Assembly (NCBI GenBank): GCA_021613535.1
Contig: CP075493.1
Span: 7,812,001-7,876,000, forward strand
Direction: 5' to 3'
Length of the DNA stretch: 64,000 nt
DNA from: Adineta vaga
Lineage: Eukaryota > Animalia > Rotifera
Below, one piece after another: positions 6,205 through 13,736 of this stretch (position 1 is its first letter; each line of letters begins with the position of its first letter). A program made the translations under genes and the position numbers. The notes beneath the pieces are model-generated. The model was not told the DNA's origin. It made no database searches and was given only the letters and a program-made list of their open reading frames with translations.

Positions 6205-6427
6205 CAATGATTCAAGATTTAATACTGTACAAACGAATTTCTATTTGTTTTCTTTTCTCTTATGTAAAGCTATCAAAAGTTAGGGACAATAAGTGATTCC
6301 TAAATGTAAATGAATCTATTTTTCAGATTGAATTCTATGACGTCAAATTCAATGAAGTGATTTTTGTTGTTTATTTTTAGATCCTTTCAGAGAACCTTTT
6401 AGTTTTTCATTCTTGTGCAATCGCAAA

Positions 6428-7162
6428 ATGTCGAAATCTGGTCAAACACTTCGAATTCCACCAGTAAGTTATTCAGTTGAACTAAATATTTTTCTTTACA
6501 ATTATCTTAATATAGATTCGTCCTATCCCTGAATTTGTTGGTGGAAATGAATGGGCTGTACCAGCTTTTAATCCAAAAGATTTTGGTGAACTTCAAAAAC
6601 AGATTATGACAAATTTAATCTATTATCAATCAAACTATGGAGCCGTTGCAGTAGTATTTCTTTTATTAGTCGCGTACGAGAAGTTTTCTTTGTTTCTTGT
6701 TTAAAATCTTTTGTATTTCGAATATTTAGCTTTTTTCGCCCAACAGCAATTATTTTTGGTCTTATTGTCGTTGCCGCTCTCCTTGCTGGTTTCGTTTATG
6801 CAACTCGTCAAAATATCAGCTTACCACCCTTTTTACACGATCGTCCGATTCTTATTCTTGCTATTCTCTTGATTAGTGCTTTTATGATTACGCGATTGTT
6901 CGGAACCGTTCTCGTTTTTCTCATTGGTATTGCTTTTCCATTAGCAGGTAATTAATTGCAAGCATTTTCTTTTTTATTCGATCTATTCTTTTTTTTAGGC
7001 ATCATTGCTCATGCAGTTGTTCGTAAGCCAACATTACAAAATAAAGCCGAAGATACTGCTGAAAATCTTTCATTACAATCAACACCCATGGGTCTTTTAC
7101 TTGGTTGGTTAGGTGCCAAAGCAGCTGCTAAGGAATCAACACCGACAATCAAACGCAAATAG
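6428..7162 (+). CDS. PRA1 family membrane protein (PRAF2/ARL6IP5-like), 4 exons
   Basis: Spliced product MSKSGQTLRIPP|IRPIPEF...IMTNLIYYQSNYGAVAVVFLL... carries the PRA1 NLxYYQxNY motif, hydrophobic hairpins, an HAVVRKPTLQNK segment and a C-terminal TPMGLLL. Confidence 0.85.
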
Positions 7163-7644: not shown

Positions 7645-9595
7645 TTATAACCACCATTCAATAATATCATCCAAATCGTTACTCAATGGTCTGATTATAT
7701 CGTGAGCTGGTGGATAATAAATTGTCGGTCGAATTGGATAGTCTCTACCATGATCTCGAAAAGCCACTCGAATTTTATCTCGAGTTGTTATGGGTTGGGA
7801 CCAATTCGTTTCCGGTGTATCATCAGGTAGATTATGTCGAAGAAATGAAAGTTCAGGTTGAAAGAGAATATGACAAAACTTTTTCGCACCATGTGCATAA
7901 CGTGGATGAGTTTCTGGATAGTGTGGTGCGAATGTTGTAATAAAGAAAGTAATACGATCGAATTCAAATACCCAACCCTTCTGGCCAATACGTGAAGGTG
8001 TAACACTCATACAATGTCGTTTCGCTGGATCATGATCCGAAAGAAAACGAAGAATTTTCTTCAAGATTTGTCCGAAATCCTACCATAATCTACGAATAAG
8101 AACTTATTGATGAACAAATGTATTGCTTACTTCAAGAGTTTCTGTTAAATCATTATGTGGAATTTCAATAACATAACCATCGATTGATGTTTCTTTTACG
8201 AATGCACAGAAAAGAACGAAACTTGGTAATAATCTAAATGAGAATGTAAAATTATTTATTAGAATTAAAATGTCTTTTAATTGCTATTTTACCGTTCACA
8301 ATTATCGTCGATTGAGATGGTATCTAGCCAATGAGGTGCATTCCAACATTTTGCTCGTTTTGCGAATATACAATCGGATTTATTCTGAATTCGATGAAAT
8401 TCATGAAATAAAGATGATTGACTGGCATTGAGATGATGTTCGAATAGAATTTGTTTCGCATGACTAATCAGTAGATATATATATATATATTATTAGGAAT
8501 CAAATTTAGTACATACTCGACTACTGTTTTTGAAATTTCATGATCATTGGTCGTTAAATTAATTTTCTCTTTTGATGATTGTGATGATGAATTACGTTTT
8601 TCAAGAAGATAAAGTGCTCCTAAAATAAACTTTTTACTTTTAGATATCTTTTTTTAAGACTGAATATTTTGTTTTTTTATTAATATAATACAACTACATT
8701 CTCATATATCAGATAGAGATTTCAATTTTCTGTTTATTTTTTGCATCGCTTTGTTTTTGTTGCTGTAACTTCGATGGTTTTTTTAGTCACCATTGTTGTT
8801 GTTGTTGCTGCTTCTGTCGATGGAATAAAAGATGCTGATTTTTGACCAATAGGTGTTTCATATCGAATATTTCCATGAAGCTCTAATTTCTGTTGACAAT
8901 ATTCAATAATATCATCGGATATATATTCACAGATTAGATCGAAGGCATGTTCTTCATCTTCCACATGTTTTCTCAATCGATCAATTCGATCACGAAACCA
9001 TTGCATTAATTTTTCTTCGTTCAATTTAACAAGACATTTTTCTCGATCAATATCACAGATGCAAATAAGTTTATCGAGAATGAAATCATCATCCAATAGT
9101 AATTGTTTCAATGAATCATTTATCAATGTTGCTAATGATAGAAAATCTTTTCGAGCATCTGACCAAATTGAAGGTAAAAGAAGAAAGATTAAATTAATTG
9201 GAGTAACTATATACAACGATCCATCGGGTACGACATGTTGATCATTAATAAACCAACTTGAATGTGAACGAGTACATCGTGTAACTTCAAAAATTGTTTT
9301 TGATTGTTGATCAATAGCATAGGATTGAGTTTGTTTTGTACGAGGATGACTGAGTTGAATAAAATGTAATTGTTCATAGTTTACTGGTACAAGACGTTTA
9401 TCGACAATTAAAACACGATCAGGGATTATGGTAGATGAAGACATCTGAAAATGAGGAAATGAAAAACTTACCAAGAAGAAGAAGAGCAGCTAGTATTGAT
9501 TTGATATTTATATGAATGGCGAGAACAAGAAATAGAGCTAATGAAGTTAGTCGTAATCCTGCGACCACATTATCTGGTAATACAAGTTTGTACAT
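7645..9595 (-). CDS. YqcI/YcgG-like protein with an N-terminal membrane anchor, 311 aa. Exons 9595-9472, 8619-8517, 8463-8293, 8233-8131, 8079-7645
   Basis: Five exons join through canonical GT-AG sites into a stop-free 936-nt frame. Motifs DCIFAKRA, ILRFLSDHDP, GWVFEFDRITFFITTFAPHYPETHPRY and ILFQPELSF occur in the YqcI/YcgG order as I recall it. Exon 1 encodes a hydrophobic segment. The gene is well supported; the family call and exon 1 are less certain. Confidence 0.7.
8734..9444 (-). CDS. RNASEH2B: Ribonuclease H2 subunit B, intronless, nested in intron 1 of the YqcI/YcgG-like gene
   Basis: FIQLSHPRT...IFEV...SSWFIND.HVVPDGSLYIVTPINLIFLLLP...KLNEEKLMQWFRDRI...AFDLICEYI are RNase H2B/Ydr279 motifs. 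First ATG at 9444; AATAAA at 8681-8676. Confidence 0.88.
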   Translation of the reverse strand: MSSSTIIPDRVLIVDKRLVPVNYEQLHFIQLSHPRTKQTQSYAIDQQSKTIFEVTRCTRSHSSWFINDQHVVPDGSLYIVTPINLIFLLLPSIWSDARKDFLSLATLINDSLKQLLLDDDFILDKLICICDIDREKCLVKLNEEKLMQWFRDRIDRLRKHVEDEEHAFDLICEYISDDIIEYCQQKLELHGNIRYETPIGQKSASFIPSTEAATTTTMVTKKTIEVTATKTKRCKK

Positions 9596-10477
9596 ATCTG
9601 AAACGATTGTTTAAATCTCTGAATAGCCATTCATCTTAATCTCATGAAACTTGAAACTTTATTCTATGAGTGATTCACGTCAGCTATTAAACCAATAGAA
9701 ATACTTTCTTATAAACTAGCAAAATATCGTCTATACCACTATGCCATTCGAAAGTCTTAAAAATAACCCACAAATATATGTTTATCAATATAATATCAAA
9801 CAGCGATCATCATCTTTTTAGATTTGGATAAAAATACAATGAACATATTTTGCACAAGTACAGGTGGTATATTCTGGAACAATTTGGTAAAGAATTATTT
9901 CTCACTTTTCTCTTTCAAAATTATGATAATCTCAAACTGATTGATTGAGTATTGAATAAGATATAGAAATAATAAACTTGAAGTGTTGCAGGCCAATAGA
10001 TGTCACTTTATTCACTTCTAAAAACAACCGATATTTTTCGAGAGAGAAAAGGGAAGCAAAAAATAATTAAGAAGAACACTGATAGTCTTGATACATATCA
10101 AATTAAAACAAATATTTATATGAATATCTTTGAATAGTATATGATCGTGCTGTTTGCGTACGAAGAAGTAACAAAATGTTAATCATAAATTATTGAAGTT
10201 TTATTACCATACAGCCTTATAACCGAAAGAAACTCATTCTATACGATGCATACAGATATATATAATATGGTTAATACGAGCAATAAAACTACGTTATAGT
10301 CGATATTTTTGATCTTTGTTTACTTCCGAAAAATCACGTCAAAACTGTCATTCATTCGAACTCAGACGTTTTGAGTAGTTCGTGGTCTGATTAAGAAATG
10401 AATAATAGGTCATTCTTGAAGAACACATGGAATAAACCTGGATATGTAAATATAAACTTTTTTTTTTATTAATAATT

Positions 10478-11207
10478 ATGGGAGAAAAAGTGGGCGAAGC
10501 AATCGGTATAAATATACGCTGAGTATATTGCCATGGATCATCACTAATCGTACTAAAAGAAAGTGAAAAGAGAAACCCATACGTATATCAACAAATAGAA
10601 AGAATACTATTAATAGTTCAGATTGTACCACTCATTGCCGGTGTTATTTTAAGTATCACCTTTATATTCTACATTGTTAGTAACGCCGTACCAGAATGGT
10701 ATGTAATATCTTTTAAATTAAAATGAACGAAAACTAACAAATGCTTAATATTATTATTTTTCGTTCCGTAGAAGCAAACAATCTAATGAATCTGTTTCAC
10801 GAAAAATTGGTCTATGGCAATTTTGTTTTTCCATTTACGACGATTCCAATTGCGATTCTGTAGAATGTTCATCGAACAATGGTAATGCTGGTCTCTGTAG
10901 TAGAATAGTTGCTGGGCGAGCTTTCATGACATTGGCTTGTATTTTGTCTGGAATCTGTACCATATGTCTATTTATATGTGCAGTATTGGGTGAGAATGTC
11001 CATCGACTAGTACTTGTTGGAAGTGAAATTCTCGCGTTCGTTTGTGTGATCTTGGGCATCATCGGCGTTGGAGTTGGTGGTAGTATTTCGACACTGCTTA
11101 GCGGAAATGGAATTCAATACTCTTTTGGGGCAGCTGCAATTATAGGTGTTATTGCGATTATTATCAACTTAGCTGGTGCTATTCTGACATTATTCATCAA
11201 ACAATAA
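10478..11207 (+). CDS. Claudin/PMP22-like tetraspan protein, copy 1 (start exon 10478-10505 tentative)
   Basis: TM1 ending AVPEW, an intron, then GLWQFC...C...C...C and RAFMTLACILS: the claudin W-GLW-C-C signature with four hydrophobic segments. There is no in-frame ATG directly upstream of TM1, so the start is inferred through intron 10506-10616. Confidence 0.8.
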
Positions 11208-11925
11208 TGGAAACAAACATATTAGGTTTTTGTTTATCCAATTGTTTTACTTAATGTTTTATTTTTCTTGTGTTTACTATTACAAAGAGTTTTATATATT
11301 CTAGAATTGAATAAAATACATATAACACCCTTGTCTTCATCATTCGAATATGTACTACACTATAAGGAAGAAAGATATATGAAAAGTACAGAATCACATG
11401 ATCTCTATGAGTCATCGCCATTGAACATTTTTCTTCCCAAACATGCATGAAGAAAGAGATGTGTACGCGTAGAATGATGTGACAAGGTTGTTTCAATTGG
11501 TACATATATATATATATATGCATGCATTATTCTACTTTTGCAATCATTTTTCAGTGCTACTATTCTTTGATCTGAAATTTATATCGTAAGTACATGGTTC
11601 ATTATTACTTCATTTTACTGTGAAACTCGAAAAGATGTCAGTGTTGTCTTTGTAGTCATGTAGACACTAAACTAAAGAGTTCAATTATCTATTGTATCTC
11701 ATCAAGATTTTGGTGAGATAGATTAGTGTTGAACTTATTGCAGACTCTTTGTAACATATGAAACTCTCTCCTTTCGATCGAAAACATAAATATCTCACAA
11801 AATATACTATGAGTTTGTTTCTTCACATGAATATTGGAAGACGAAATGTCACAAGTTTTATTTGGATAAAAACATGTTATATCTTATAGGACTATTACGC
11901 ATCTCTACAAACAAATAAATAAAAC

Positions 11926-12517
11926 ATGCCGTCAAAAATTCAAATCATATCCATCATTGCTGGTATGATCTTTGGTATTACTTTTACACTCTACACTGTT
12001 AGCAATGCCGTGCCAGAATGGTATGTACTTAATTTCAAAGTGAAATAATCAAAATAACAATACTTTCTTTTTAATTTGCAGGACCAAAATATCTATTGAA
12101 GATGGTACTGAAAGATCTGGCCTATGGCGAGCTTGTACTACTTATCCTTATAGAAGTGAATGCCATGCTTTAGCATGTCCAGCACACAGGGATGATGCCG
12201 GTTTTTGCAAGAGGATCATTGCTGGTCGAGCTTTCATGACATTAGCTTGTATTATATCTGGTGTAATTACTATATGCTTCCTTATAAGTGCAGCTATTAG
12301 CGATCGTTATAATCGATTATTACTTGTGCCAGCCAAGATTTTAGGTTTTGTGTGTTTGATCATGGGAATCATTGGTGTGGGAGTTGGTGGTAGTATTTCA
12401 CAACTACTTAGGCAAAGTGGAAACGAATTTACTTTTGGTGTAGGTGCAATTGTAGGTGTTGTTGCAATTATTATCAATTTTTTTGGTGCTATCATAGTCC
12501 TATTCGCTAAAGAATAA
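11926..12517 (+). CDS. Claudin/PMP22-like tetraspan protein, copy 2 (tandem paralog)
   Basis: MPSKIQIISIIAG...SNAVPEW|TKIS...GLWRAC...C...C...CKRIIAGRAFMTLAC. Same intron position as copy 1 and a shared GIIGVGVGGSIS segment. Confidence 0.85.
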
Positions 12518-12827
12518 ATGAATCGTCTTTTTTTCGAATATCTTCTGTTCTATAGCGTGTAATATATCCTTTCTATTATTTTGTTTACGAATAATATACG
12601 TAAAGATAATTTTGACAACTATTTTCGCGATATTTCGTAGAAGTTTTGCAATTACAATGTGTAAGAGAACGCCTTATTTTAAGTCAATACTGTTTTCTTT
12701 CTTCCGTATCTCATCTCCAAGATAATTTACGCAATAATTCTTTCGTAATAATGCTTGAAATCATCTATAAAATGCTGTTCAGTTACAAAGATATAGTATA
12801 TTTATTGTGAATGGCTTATCAACAACG

Positions 12828-13736
12828 ATGCCATGGAAGCCAGTATATAAGAGCAAGAAAGAATGCAAAAATGAACGTACATTAGTTCTTCTTTTGGGTG
12901 GTTCGATTTATGATGATGGTATTGGTGTACAGATTACTAATCGACGTCGTCGTGGAGACGACCGTTTTCGTACTAAACAAGATGTTCATTTAGAAGAACA
13001 CCTTTGGCAACGAGATTTTCGAGCTATAACAGAATATTTTGAGCGAGAACATGCTACTGTTTGGCGTTCTGTACCAACACGTCTTCACAGTGATCGAAAT
13101 GAAGCATTGGAATTGATTAATGCTTTTTTTCAACTTGATGGTGATGATCATAATAGAAGAGAACGACGAACATTTGTTCTCTATTGGGCCGGTCATGGTC
13201 TACATAATTCAGGAGATTGGGGATTTTCAATTGGTGGTGAAATAACTTGTCAAGATATAATCAATGCTTGGCGTTCACGTTCAGTTGCTGATAACTATAA
13301 TGATATGTCTTCATTAACAATTATAGCTGATACTTGCTATTCAGGTGGATGGATAGAAGAACTCCGAAGAGAGAATATTCCTCGACTTGCTTATCAAGCT
13401 GCTAGTCGAGCTGATGAACCTGCCTATGTTGTTGATGATGGTAATATTCCAAGAAGTTTACTAATGCGTAAATTTATTATTGAACAAAACCATCCCATAG
13501 GATGGTATACATGGACATGTCGAGATCAACATCCGATGCATTTTTGTGAATATTCAGAAACAGAAAATGGTGAAGATTTAAGTGCTGGACAACGACGTGC
13601 ATTGGTTCATGGTGGACCATACTATTTCTTTACTGTTGATCGTCATTGGACATCAAATGGTAAGATGACAACGAAAGAACGTAGAGTGCAACTCAGTAAA
13701 CTATCAGAATATGGAACATTTATTGATGATCATTGA
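12828..13736 (+). CDS. Intronless caspase-fold (clan CD, metacaspase/orthocaspase-like) cysteine protease
   Basis: FVLYWAGHG (His codon 13194) and LTIIADTCYSGGW (Cys codon 13335) give a His-Gly...D-x-C-x-S-G dyad, each after a hydrophobic strand, followed by AASRADEPAY. The first in-frame ATG is at 12828. Confidence 0.75.
   Translation: MPWKPVYKSKKECKNERTLVLLLGGSIYDDGIGVQITNRRRRGDDRFRTKQDVHLEEHLWQRDFRAITEYFEREHATVWRSVPTRLHSDRNEALELINAFFQLDGDDHNRRERRTFVLYWAGHGLHNSGDWGFSIGGEITCQDIINAWRSRSVADNYNDMSSLTIIADTCYSGGWIEELRRENIPRLAYQAASRADEPAYVVDDGNIPRSLLMRKFIIEQNHPIGWYTWTCRDQHPMHFCEYSETENGEDLSAGQRRALVHGGPYYFFTVDRHWTSNGKMTTKERRVQLSKLSEYGTFIDDH

What the first reader, a model, noticed from the sequence alone, without database searches (positions are those of the whole stretch)
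8620..9610. RNASEH2B nested on the same strand inside intron 1 of another gene, each ATG preceded by TTTCAG: candidate alternative cis/trans-splicing switch
Seen: host exon 1 (9595-9472) ends at a strong G|GTAAGT donor and joins exon 2 (8619) in frame. The 852-nt intron between them holds the complete intronless RNASEH2B ORF (9444-8734) and its AATAAA (8681-8676). The RNASEH2B ATG directly follows TTTTCAG only 27 nt after the donor. That is far below the 50-65 nt intron size here, and both splicing at it and read-through hit a stop, so there is no fusion protein and no room for an intronic promoter. The host ATG also follows TTTCAG (+2 nt). Known: rotifers use spliced-leader trans-splicing. 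Inference: one promoter gives two mutually exclusive mRNAs, either cis-splicing that removes RNASEH2B, or SL addition (or an upstream UTR exon) at 9444 with intronic polyadenylation.
Basis: partly seen in the sequence, partly recalled or inferred. Interest (0 to 1): 0.8.

Follow-up and report, generated by a model that had tools for sequence, protein, structure and literature searches.

The report
RNASEH2B nested in rotifer host intron
In bdelloid rotifers the only RNase H2 subunit B gene lies, intronless and on the same strand, inside the old first intron of a membrane-anchored YqcI/YcgG-like gene; RNA-derived contigs from a sister species show both genes on one transcript, but how the RNASEH2B mRNA gets its 5' end is still untested.

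Summary

The layout e1, short spacer, RNASEH2B, poly(A) signal, e2-e5 recurs in nine other bdelloid loci, including Didymodactylos.

Exon 1 belongs to the host gene:
- It is under purifying selection (pN/pS 0.13-0.40).
- With exon 2 it matches the continuous N-terminus of mollusc and brachiopod orthologues.
- Lingula has intron 1 at the same codon and phase.
- A sister bdelloid has a 309-residue product, P0203, that joins e1 to e2-e5 at the predicted junction.

A second RNA-derived contig, L011, from that species carries the RNASEH2B ORF. There a donor 16 nt after the stop is spliced to the e2 acceptor, removing AATAAA. So transcription runs through RNASEH2B into the host exons, and a third isoform exists.

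Spliced-leader addition at 9444 is plausible. The genome holds 42 SL RNA gene copies, and a branch-like motif plus TTTCAG is conserved 25-46 nt after the e1 donor.

This scan has noted other same-strand nests elsewhere in this genome.

The parts
9598..9603 (-). TTTCAG acceptor-like hexamer, 2 nt before the host ATG
   Evidence: TTTCAG(A)(T/G) directly before the e1 ATG in 6 of 9 distinct bdelloid loci (7 of 10 counting L007, same sequence as L006); the other three have an AG acceptor-like site 2-23 nt upstream.
9472..9595 (-). Host exon 1: ATG plus 41 codons plus 1 nt, a hydrophobic N-terminal anchor, phase-1 donor G|GTAAGT
   Evidence: pN/pS 0.13-0.40; variable columns by codon position 24/5/31. 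Homologous to the N-terminus of mollusc and brachiopod orthologues. Identical e1 joined to e2 in P0203.
8620..9471 (-). Host intron 1 (852 nt), phase 1, containing the whole RNASEH2B gene
   Evidence: Same codon and phase as intron 1 of Lingula and Brachionus, which hold no RNASEH2B.
9445..9471 (-). 27-nt spacer: donor GTAAGT, branch-like CTCAT (9455-9451), TTTTCAG (9451-9445)
   Evidence: Spacer is 25-46 nt in 8 loci, and CT(A/C)A(T/C) plus TTTCAG directly precedes the RNASEH2B ATG in the seven loci aligned (L013 ends ...TTTTCAAGAG; D. carnosus has TTCAG 13 nt before the ATG).
8734..9444 (-). Intronless RNASEH2B ORF (236 aa plus stop)
   Evidence: Pfam PF17745 E 1.2e-12, PF09468 E 0.011. Only copy in the 100.8-Mb assembly. 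28 bdelloid relatives at 58-80% identity.
8676..8681 (-). AATAAA poly(A) signal of RNASEH2B, 56 nt before the exon 2 acceptor
   Evidence: the distance from signal to e2 acceptor is 45-56 nt in 8 loci. In the sister species the 69-nt piece holding it is spliced out in contig L011.
8517..8619 (-). Host exon 2 (103 nt, phase 1 in, phase 2 out); acceptor AG at 8621-8620
   Evidence: Length is 97, 100 or 103 nt in all loci. No in-frame ATG. An in-frame stop lies 7-25 codons upstream if unspliced. The orthologous acceptor is used in L011 and P0203.
8293..8463 (-). Host exon 3 (171 nt), start of the YqcI/YcgG-like domain (CIFAKRA motif)
8131..8233 (-). Host exon 4 (103 nt)
7645..8079 (-). Host exon 5 (435 nt including the stop); CDS total 936 nt, 311 aa
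   Evidence: Pfam PF08892 E 6.9e-5 on this exon alone. 79-87% identical in bdelloid loci L004-L009 (72% in D. carnosus L012).

Best explanation
An intronless RNASEH2B gene, the only one in the genome, occupies almost all of the old phase-1 first intron of a membrane-anchored YqcI/YcgG-like gene, on the same strand.

Shown:
- Exon 1 is a translated part of the host gene.
- Exon 1 is spliced to exon 2 across RNASEH2B.
- Transcription passes the RNASEH2B poly(A) signal into the host exons.
- Read-through RNA can be spliced from a weak donor in the RNASEH2B 3'UTR to the exon 2 acceptor.

Inferred:
- Both genes are read from one primary transcript that starts upstream of exon 1.
- If the exon 1 donor waits for exon 2, RNASEH2B is discarded with the intron and the host mRNA results.
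- If the acceptor at the RNASEH2B ATG is used instead, the product is RNASEH2B mRNA. That acceptor is only 25-46 nt from the exon 1 donor, too close for cis-splicing, so it most likely receives the spliced leader. The RNA then ends at the intronic poly(A) site, or, after read-through, runs on into host exons 2-5 as 3'UTR.
- The closeness of donor and acceptor may make the two choices sterically exclusive.
For: Anatomy and its conservation in ten bdelloid loci.

Exon 1 is coding: pN/pS 0.13-0.40. Exon 2 indels come only in multiples of 3, and there is no other in-frame ATG.

The e1+e2 N-terminus is homologous to mollusc and brachiopod orthologues. The Lingula intron is at the same codon and phase.

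P0203 equals L013 e1, a Gly junction codon, and L011 e2-e5, all at 100%.

L011 and L013 are identical except for a 69-nt GT..AG piece holding AATAAA. Introns 2-4 and the PRA1 intron are also absent from L011, so it is RNA-derived.

The rotifer SL sequence is given in PMC3795323. It is followed by GT at 42 sites in this genome, against 0 for the control pattern.

A branch-like motif plus TTTCAG sits directly before the RNASEH2B ATG in the seven loci aligned (L013 ends TTTTCAAGAG).
Against:
- The junction evidence comes from one sister species.
- No SL-bearing RNASEH2B sequence was found. The one pattern scan gave only a chance bacterial hit, and no cluster member shows an SL-encoded extension.
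- In D. carnosus the spacer is 122 nt, with the acceptor 109 nt from the donor. Cis-splicing of exon 1 to RNASEH2B is sterically possible there.
- In L009 exon 1 is broken by an 89-nt insertion.
- A separate start site inside or just before exon 1 is not excluded.
Confidence: 0.6

Rival explanations
1. Ordinary nesting with separate promoters. RNASEH2B has its own transcription start inside or just upstream of host exon 1, with or without SL addition. The two mRNAs are made independently, and the host polymerase merely runs through.
For: Nothing here maps a start site. Scan notes on other same-strand nests in this genome reached mixed conclusions about shared promoters (unchecked notes). The acceptor before the RNASEH2B ATG would work equally well on a short outron.
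Against: Only 151 nt separate the two ATGs, and 124 of them are constrained coding sequence. The spacer of 25-46 nt holds little beyond splice signals. L011 shows RNASEH2B and host exons on one RNA, though that fits either start site.
Confidence: 0.22
2. RNASEH2B is translated from an mRNA that keeps exon 1 as its 5' leader, either unspliced or (in D. carnosus) cis-spliced. Exon 1 then acts as an overlapping upstream ORF, and RNASEH2B is reached by leaky scanning or reinitiation.
For: The e1 ORF runs into the RNASEH2B start in every locus. In D. carnosus a spliced e1-RNASEH2B RNA would end the upstream ORF at a TGA that overlaps the RNASEH2B ATG.
Against: A 49-58-codon upstream ORF (49 codons if exon 1 were cis-spliced to 9444, 58 if the spacer is kept) that overlaps the main ATG normally blocks translation of an essential housekeeping gene. 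The conserved branch-like motif plus TTTCAG directly at the ATG has no role in this model. Spacers of 25-38 nt are about half the local intron size of 51-59 nt.
Confidence: 0.1
3. The host gene starts downstream of RNASEH2B, at an ATG inside exon 2 (about 8546) with the weak donor CA|GTAGTC. The upstream 41-codon ORF is unrelated.
For: In A. vaga alone this alternative frame would join exon 3 in frame (read).
Against: In L010 and L003 the same alternative frame cannot join exon 3. Exon 1 is conserved as protein, is homologous to orthologue N-termini, and is joined to e2 in P0203.
Confidence: 0.03

Closest known systems
C. elegans unc-60 locus (UNC-60A/B; Kuroyanagi 2013, PMC3875643)
   Same: One transcription unit. 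A first exon carries the start codon, and its donor must be kept until a distant acceptor is transcribed. A complete upstream coding unit with its own poly(A) site lies about 90 nt before that acceptor (here 45-56 nt from signal to acceptor). The choice is made at the first acceptor.
   Different: In unc-60 both products are cis-spliced to exon 1 and share its ATG, and they are paralogues. Here the nested ORF cannot use exon 1: it is out of frame with stops, and the spacer is 25-46 nt. The two proteins are unrelated.
Cholinergic gene locus (unc-17/VAChT inside the first intron of cha-1/ChAT)
   Same: A same-strand gene in the host's first intron, processed alternatively from a common precursor.
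   Different: There the shared exon is untranslated and is cis-spliced to both genes, and the two products act in one pathway. Here exon 1 is coding and host-specific, and RNase H2B has no known link to a YcgG-like protein.
Spliced-leader-resolved operons of nematodes, tunicates and chaetognaths
   Same: Very short distances between processing signals. Polyadenylation of the upstream unit lies close to the next 3' splice site. SL RNA genes are present. There is evidence of a polycistronic RNA.
   Different: The 'upstream cistron' here is only exon 1 of a gene whose remaining exons lie after the nested gene, so the two mRNAs exclude each other on any one precursor. Operons and polycistronic mRNAs had not been reported for rotifers as of Wenzel et al. 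2021 (PMC7986045).
Host/nested gene pairs of Drosophila and mammals
   Same: A complete gene inside a host intron.
   Different: Those nested genes usually have their own promoters in long introns. From my own knowledge, not checked in the papers, they are more often on the opposite strand. Here the nested gene fills the intron, with 25-46 nt and 83-115 nt of flank.

Membership tests
RNase H2 subunit B (RNASEH2B / Ydr279p) | N-terminal triple-barrel domain (PF17745) | tested here: met
   E 1.2e-12, 48.3 bits against a cut-off of 25.2.
RNase H2 subunit B (RNASEH2B / Ydr279p) | Winged-helix domain (PF09468) | tested here: inconclusive
   E 0.011, 16.7 bits, below the cut-off of 25.2. The domain is precomputed for several bdelloid orthologues.
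RNase H2 subunit B (RNASEH2B / Ydr279p) | Assembles with subunits A and C; C-terminal PCNA-binding motif | not tested
   No structure prediction or motif test was done.
YqcI/YcgG family (PF08892), host gene | Match to the family profile | tested here: inconclusive
   Exon 5 alone gives E 6.9e-5, 23.2 bits, below the cut-off of 27. PF08892 is precomputed for the natural spliced orthologue P0030 and for animal orthologues. The joined A. vaga protein was not searched, under the operators' rule.
Same-strand host/nested gene pair | Nested gene lies wholly inside one host intron, and the flanking host exons are joined in mRNA | tested here: met
   Coordinates. The e1-e2 junction is seen in P0203 of a sister species. 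It was not seen directly in A. vaga.
Same-strand host/nested gene pair | Nested gene yields its own mature mRNA | not testable with these tools
Only the 3' part of RNASEH2B was seen in RNA-derived contig L011.
SL-resolved operon | Polycistronic precursor | tested here: inconclusive
   L011 carries the RNASEH2B ORF plus host exons 2-5 on one RNA-derived contig. Its 5' end is unknown.
SL-resolved operon | Spliced leader added at the internal cistron's acceptor | not testable with these tools
   The pattern scan of metagenome contigs gave one chance bacterial hit. There were no reads.
SL-resolved operon | SL RNA genes in the genome | tested here: met
   42 sites of SL followed by GT, against 0 for the control pattern. 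SL sequence from PMC3795323.
Shared-first-exon loci (unc-60 / cholinergic type) | Both mRNAs are cis-spliced to the common first exon and use it productively | tested here: not met
   Exon 1 joined to 9444 is out of frame and stops after eight further codons. The spacer is 25-46 nt in 8 loci, against local introns of 51-59 nt.

The most novel reading that the evidence does not exclude
Bdelloid rotifers may use same-strand intron nesting plus spliced-leader trans-splicing as their form of operon. Here the exon 1 donor and the nested gene's acceptor are held 25-46 nt apart, so U1 and U2-type complexes could not both sit there. Each precursor would then commit to either the host mRNA or RNASEH2B mRNA. 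The poly(A) site, held 45-56 nt before the exon 2 acceptor, would act as a second competing pair. On this reading the locus is a hard-wired ratio-setting device, and one of many such nests in the genome.
Probability: 0.3. Interest if true: 0.72.

Novelty: new variant of a known kind. Interest (0 to 1): 0.55.

Why it matters
Operons and polycistronic mRNAs had not been reported for rotifers, although they trans-splice (PMC7986045). This locus shows an essential housekeeping gene embedded in another gene's transcription unit. The arrangement is conserved across all sampled bdelloids and absent in Brachionus and Lingula. Evidence from RNA-derived contigs supports both the skipping splice and a read-through isoform.

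It offers a compact, testable system of about 2 kb for asking how a genome with 50-60-nt introns handles an 852-nt intron. It can also test how donor, acceptor and poly(A) signals placed within tens of nucleotides compete.

It also corrects public annotations. The R. magnacalcarata and D. carnosus models fuse the two genes. The Brachionus model misses the real first exon. Rotaria sp. Silwood2 has no host gene model at all.

Tried and rejected

2. Homeologue comparison. Neither gene has a second copy in the assembly.

3. Word search with exon 1 of P0008. It found only itself and is uninformative.

4. Alternative host start inside exon 2 (ATG about 8546, donor CA|GTAGTC). Rejected, because the frame does not carry over in L010 and L003.

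5. Exon 1 spliced or read through into RNASEH2B as a fusion. Rejected, because it is out of frame with early stops.

6. SL supplying an ATG to exon 2. Rejected, because the rotifer SL has no ATG.

7. Recent bacterial origin of the host gene. Rejected, because orthologues with the same N-terminal anchor exist in molluscs, brachiopods, a hemichordate and Brachionus.

8. Scan for SL joined to the RNASEH2B start in metagenome contigs. It gave one chance hit in a bacterial contig.

9. SL-encoded N-terminal extensions among RNASEH2B cluster members. None found.

10. A long-range stem bridging the ends of intron 1. The only candidate is an AT-rich 11-mer, I8. Read by eye against the spacer and exon 2 sequences, the spacer arm is not kept in other loci.

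11. A canonical intron to explain the 89-nt interruption of exon 1 in L009. None restores the conserved peptide.

12. The joined A. vaga host protein was not built or searched, under the operators' rule. Exons were searched apart, and the natural orthologue P0203 was used instead.
Full report
**1. What is in the sequence**

The window is G000:C1:7812001-7876000 of a 100.8-Mb assembly in six contigs. That matches the published chromosome-level Adineta vaga genome; the match is from my own knowledge, and scan notes also name A. vaga.

- TTTCAG at 9603-9598, two bases, then ATG at 9595.
- A 124-nt open exon (9595-9472) ending G|GTAAGT.
- A 27-nt spacer ending TTTTCAG.
- A 236-codon intronless ORF (9444-8734).
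- AATAAA at 8681-8676.
- AG at 8621-8620, then an open frame in phase 1 from 8619.

The ORF is RNase H2 subunit B (PF17745, E 1.2e-12). It is the only copy in the assembly.

The downstream exons are 8619-8517, 8463-8293, 8233-8131 and 8079-7645. With exon 1 they give a 936-nt CDS. Its last exon matches YqcI/YcgG (PF08892, E 6.9e-5). Intron 1 is 852 nt; introns 2-4 are 53, 59 and 51 nt.

**2. Exon 1 belongs to the host gene**

Nine further bdelloid loci all carry exon 1, a short spacer, RNASEH2B, a poly(A) signal and exon 2 onward, in the same order and strand. The exceptions at the 3' end are Rotaria sp. Silwood2 (L003), where exons 3-5 were not found within the locus after an insertion in intron 2; L006, which ends inside exon 3; L010, which ends within exon 3; and L013, which ends within exon 2. 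They come from metagenome contigs, Logan contigs, and the NCBI assemblies of Rotaria sp. Silwood2 and Didymodactylos carnosus.

- Exon 1 is always 124 nt with a phase-1 G|GT(A/G)AG donor. Pairwise pN/pS is 0.13-0.40. Variable columns fall 24/5/31 on codon positions 1/2/3.
- Exon 2 is 97, 100 or 103 nt. It never has an in-frame ATG. If left unspliced it is preceded by an in-frame stop within 7-25 codons. Its constraint is weaker (pN/pS 0.42-0.78), as expected for a linker.
- An alternative start inside exon 2 that would work in A. vaga fails in L010 and L003.

**3. The host gene is an old animal gene**

It is not a recent foreign gene. Orthologues of 284-326 residues occur in bivalves, gastropods, Lingula and Brachionus calyciflorus; a 387-residue hit in a hemichordate (Glandiceps) and other animal hits up to 387 residues lie outside that range.

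Their continuous N-termini align with exon 1 plus exon 2. For example ...LALLGSIYFL... in a bivalve aligns with ...LLLLG|ALYLL... here.

In Lingula, exon 1 ends ...ALL plus G|GTACGT and exon 2 resumes in phase 1 at the aligned codon. So intron 1 is at the same position and phase. It is 273 nt there and holds no gene.

In Brachionus the true exon 1 lies at L014:2697-2835. It is followed by a roughly 1.1-kb intron with no RNASEH2B match (tblastn, E < 0.01) and no ORF longer than 52 aa.

The nesting is therefore bdelloid-specific, and it predates the split from Didymodactylos. An intronless RNASEH2B that fills an old intron suggests a retrogene. That is an inference and was not tested.

**4. Evidence from RNA-derived contigs, from a sister species**

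L013 is a genomic metagenome contig with e1, a 46-nt spacer, RNASEH2B, 85 nt, then e2.

*Isoform joining e1 to e2.* P0203 is a 309-residue product called on a 3,227-nt Logan contig. Residues 1-41 equal L013 exon 1. Residue 42 is the Gly expected from the G|GT junction codon. Residues 43-309 equal exons 2-5 of L011. All are 100% identical. Such an ORF cannot exist on the genomic DNA of L013, so exon 1 is spliced to exon 2 over RNASEH2B.

*Read-through isoform.* L011 (Logan run SRR5248415) lacks host introns 2-4 and the intron of the convergent PRA1 gene, so it derives from RNA. It is 343/343 and 84/84 identical to L013 on either side of one missing 69-nt piece. That piece starts GTCTCT 16 nt after the RNASEH2B stop, ends TCTAG at the exon 2 acceptor, and contains AATAAA.

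Three things follow:
- Polymerase reads through the RNASEH2B poly(A) signal into the host exons on the same RNA.
- The predicted exon 2 acceptor is used.

It cannot express the host protein, because a TAG stop intervenes and there is no ATG. It is best read as RNASEH2B mRNA with a long alternative 3'UTR, or as a by-product; such an RNA would be expected to be an NMD target (from general knowledge of NMD, not tested here).

P0211 and P0212, from another species, also start at codon 3 of exon 2. This suggests a stop upstream of exon 2 rather than exon 1.

**5. How the RNASEH2B mRNA gets its 5' end**

This was not shown. The case for a real 3' splice site at 9445/9444 is comparative:
- In the seven loci aligned a CT(A/C)A(T/C) branch-like motif and TTTCAG directly abut the ATG; L013 ends ...TTTTCAAGAG before its ATG, and in D. 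carnosus the acceptor TTCAG lies 13 nt before the ATG.
- The rest of the spacer varies in sequence and in length: 25, 27, 34, 34, 35, 36, 38 and 46 nt.
- These lengths are about half the local intron size. The exon 1 donor therefore cannot plausibly pair with this acceptor, and such a splice would in any case be out of frame.
- An acceptor without a usable donor is the classic substrate for trans-splicing. This rests on established nematode work, recalled from my own knowledge.
- The rotifer SL (PMC3795323), followed by GT, occurs 42 times in this genome against 0 for the reversed control.

Against, or open:
- D. carnosus has 109 nt between donor and acceptor, so cis-splicing is possible there.
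- One scan for SL joined to the RNASEH2B start found only a chance bacterial match.
- No cluster member carries an SL-encoded extension.
- A start site within exon 1 cannot be excluded.

**6. Other regularities**

The distance from AATAAA to the exon 2 acceptor is 45-56 nt in eight loci, while the distance from stop to signal varies from 23 to 59 nt. Cleavage and use of the exon 2 acceptor therefore also sit close together. This resembles unc-60, where the exon 5A poly(A) site is about 90 nt before exon 2B.

**7. Comparison with what is known**

The closest analogues are C. elegans unc-60 and the cholinergic locus unc-17/cha-1, and SL-resolved operons.

This locus fails the defining feature of the shared-first-exon loci, because exon 1 cannot serve RNASEH2B. 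It differs from an operon because the 'first cistron' is only exon 1 of a gene that resumes after the nested gene.

Rotifer operons and polycistronic mRNAs had not been reported as of 2021.

Notes of this scan list at least seven other same-strand nested genes in this genome and two operon-like clusters, one note claiming SL addition to the nested gene. These are unchecked notes. They suggest this locus is one instance of a recurrent bdelloid pattern rather than a singular device.

**8. Limits**

- The junction evidence comes from one sister species.
Exons were searched apart, and natural proteins were used for whole-length comparisons.

**Verdict**

The nested architecture and the exon 1-exon 2 splice are well supported, and co-transcription is supported. 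The trans-splicing step and any regulated switch remain inferences.

Noticed in passing
L003:4905-8000 (Rotaria sp. Silwood2, CAJNVN010000041.1): Directly after host exon 2 and a long T run, G+C-richer DNA unlike the AT-rich surroundings interrupts intron 2. Exons 3-5 were not found within the locus, and the NCBI annotation has no host gene model there. It is possibly a transposon insertion; no transposon or reverse-transcriptase family scan was run (a weak opposite-strand tblastn hit at 6364-6555 was to the RNASEH2B query, E 0.82, and means nothing).
   Followed up: partly
L009:3754-3966: Host exon 1 is interrupted by an 89-nt insertion. It shifts the frame, and no GT-AG, GC-AG or AT-AC removal restores the conserved peptide. 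Exons 2-5 look intact. The contig has only 2x coverage, so this may be an allele, a recent insertion or an assembly error.
   Followed up: partly
P0029 (R. magnacalcarata), P0031/L012 (D. carnosus), P0184/L014 (B. calyciflorus): Public gene models here look wrong. Two fuse RNASEH2B to host exons; the R. magnacalcarata model uses G|GTCAAA in the conserved IGQK codons, which is in phase with exon 2. The Brachionus model uses a tiny false first exon instead of the real one at L014:2697-2835. RNA-derived L011 reads straight through the IGQK site.
   Followed up: partly
window 6531-7162 (+): A PRA1-family gene converges on the host gene. In the sister species one RNA-derived contig (L011) runs from the host 3' end into PRA1 on the opposite strand, so the 3' ends probably overlap.
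   Followed up: partly
G000:C1:2551158-2551338, C5:9884354-9925971 and others: Many of the 42 SL RNA gene copies sit in head-to-head pairs about 132 nt apart (start-to-start about 157 nt), and they cluster on contigs C2, C5 and C6.
   Followed up: no
window 9600-12828: In A. vaga, host exon 1 is about 3.2 kb from the upstream divergent neighbour (a 301-aa protein gene at 12828-13736, +). In L004 the gap is about 440 nt. The extra DNA holds short ORFs, for example 10926-11207, and was not analysed.
   Followed up: no
window 8690-8705 and orthologous loci: A conserved block GAATGTAG(A/T)TGT lies just upstream of the RNASEH2B AATAAA in most loci. It could be a UGUA-type polyadenylation enhancer, or the weak donor used for the read-through isoform. 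The sister species L013 lacks it and uses GTCTCT.
   Followed up: no
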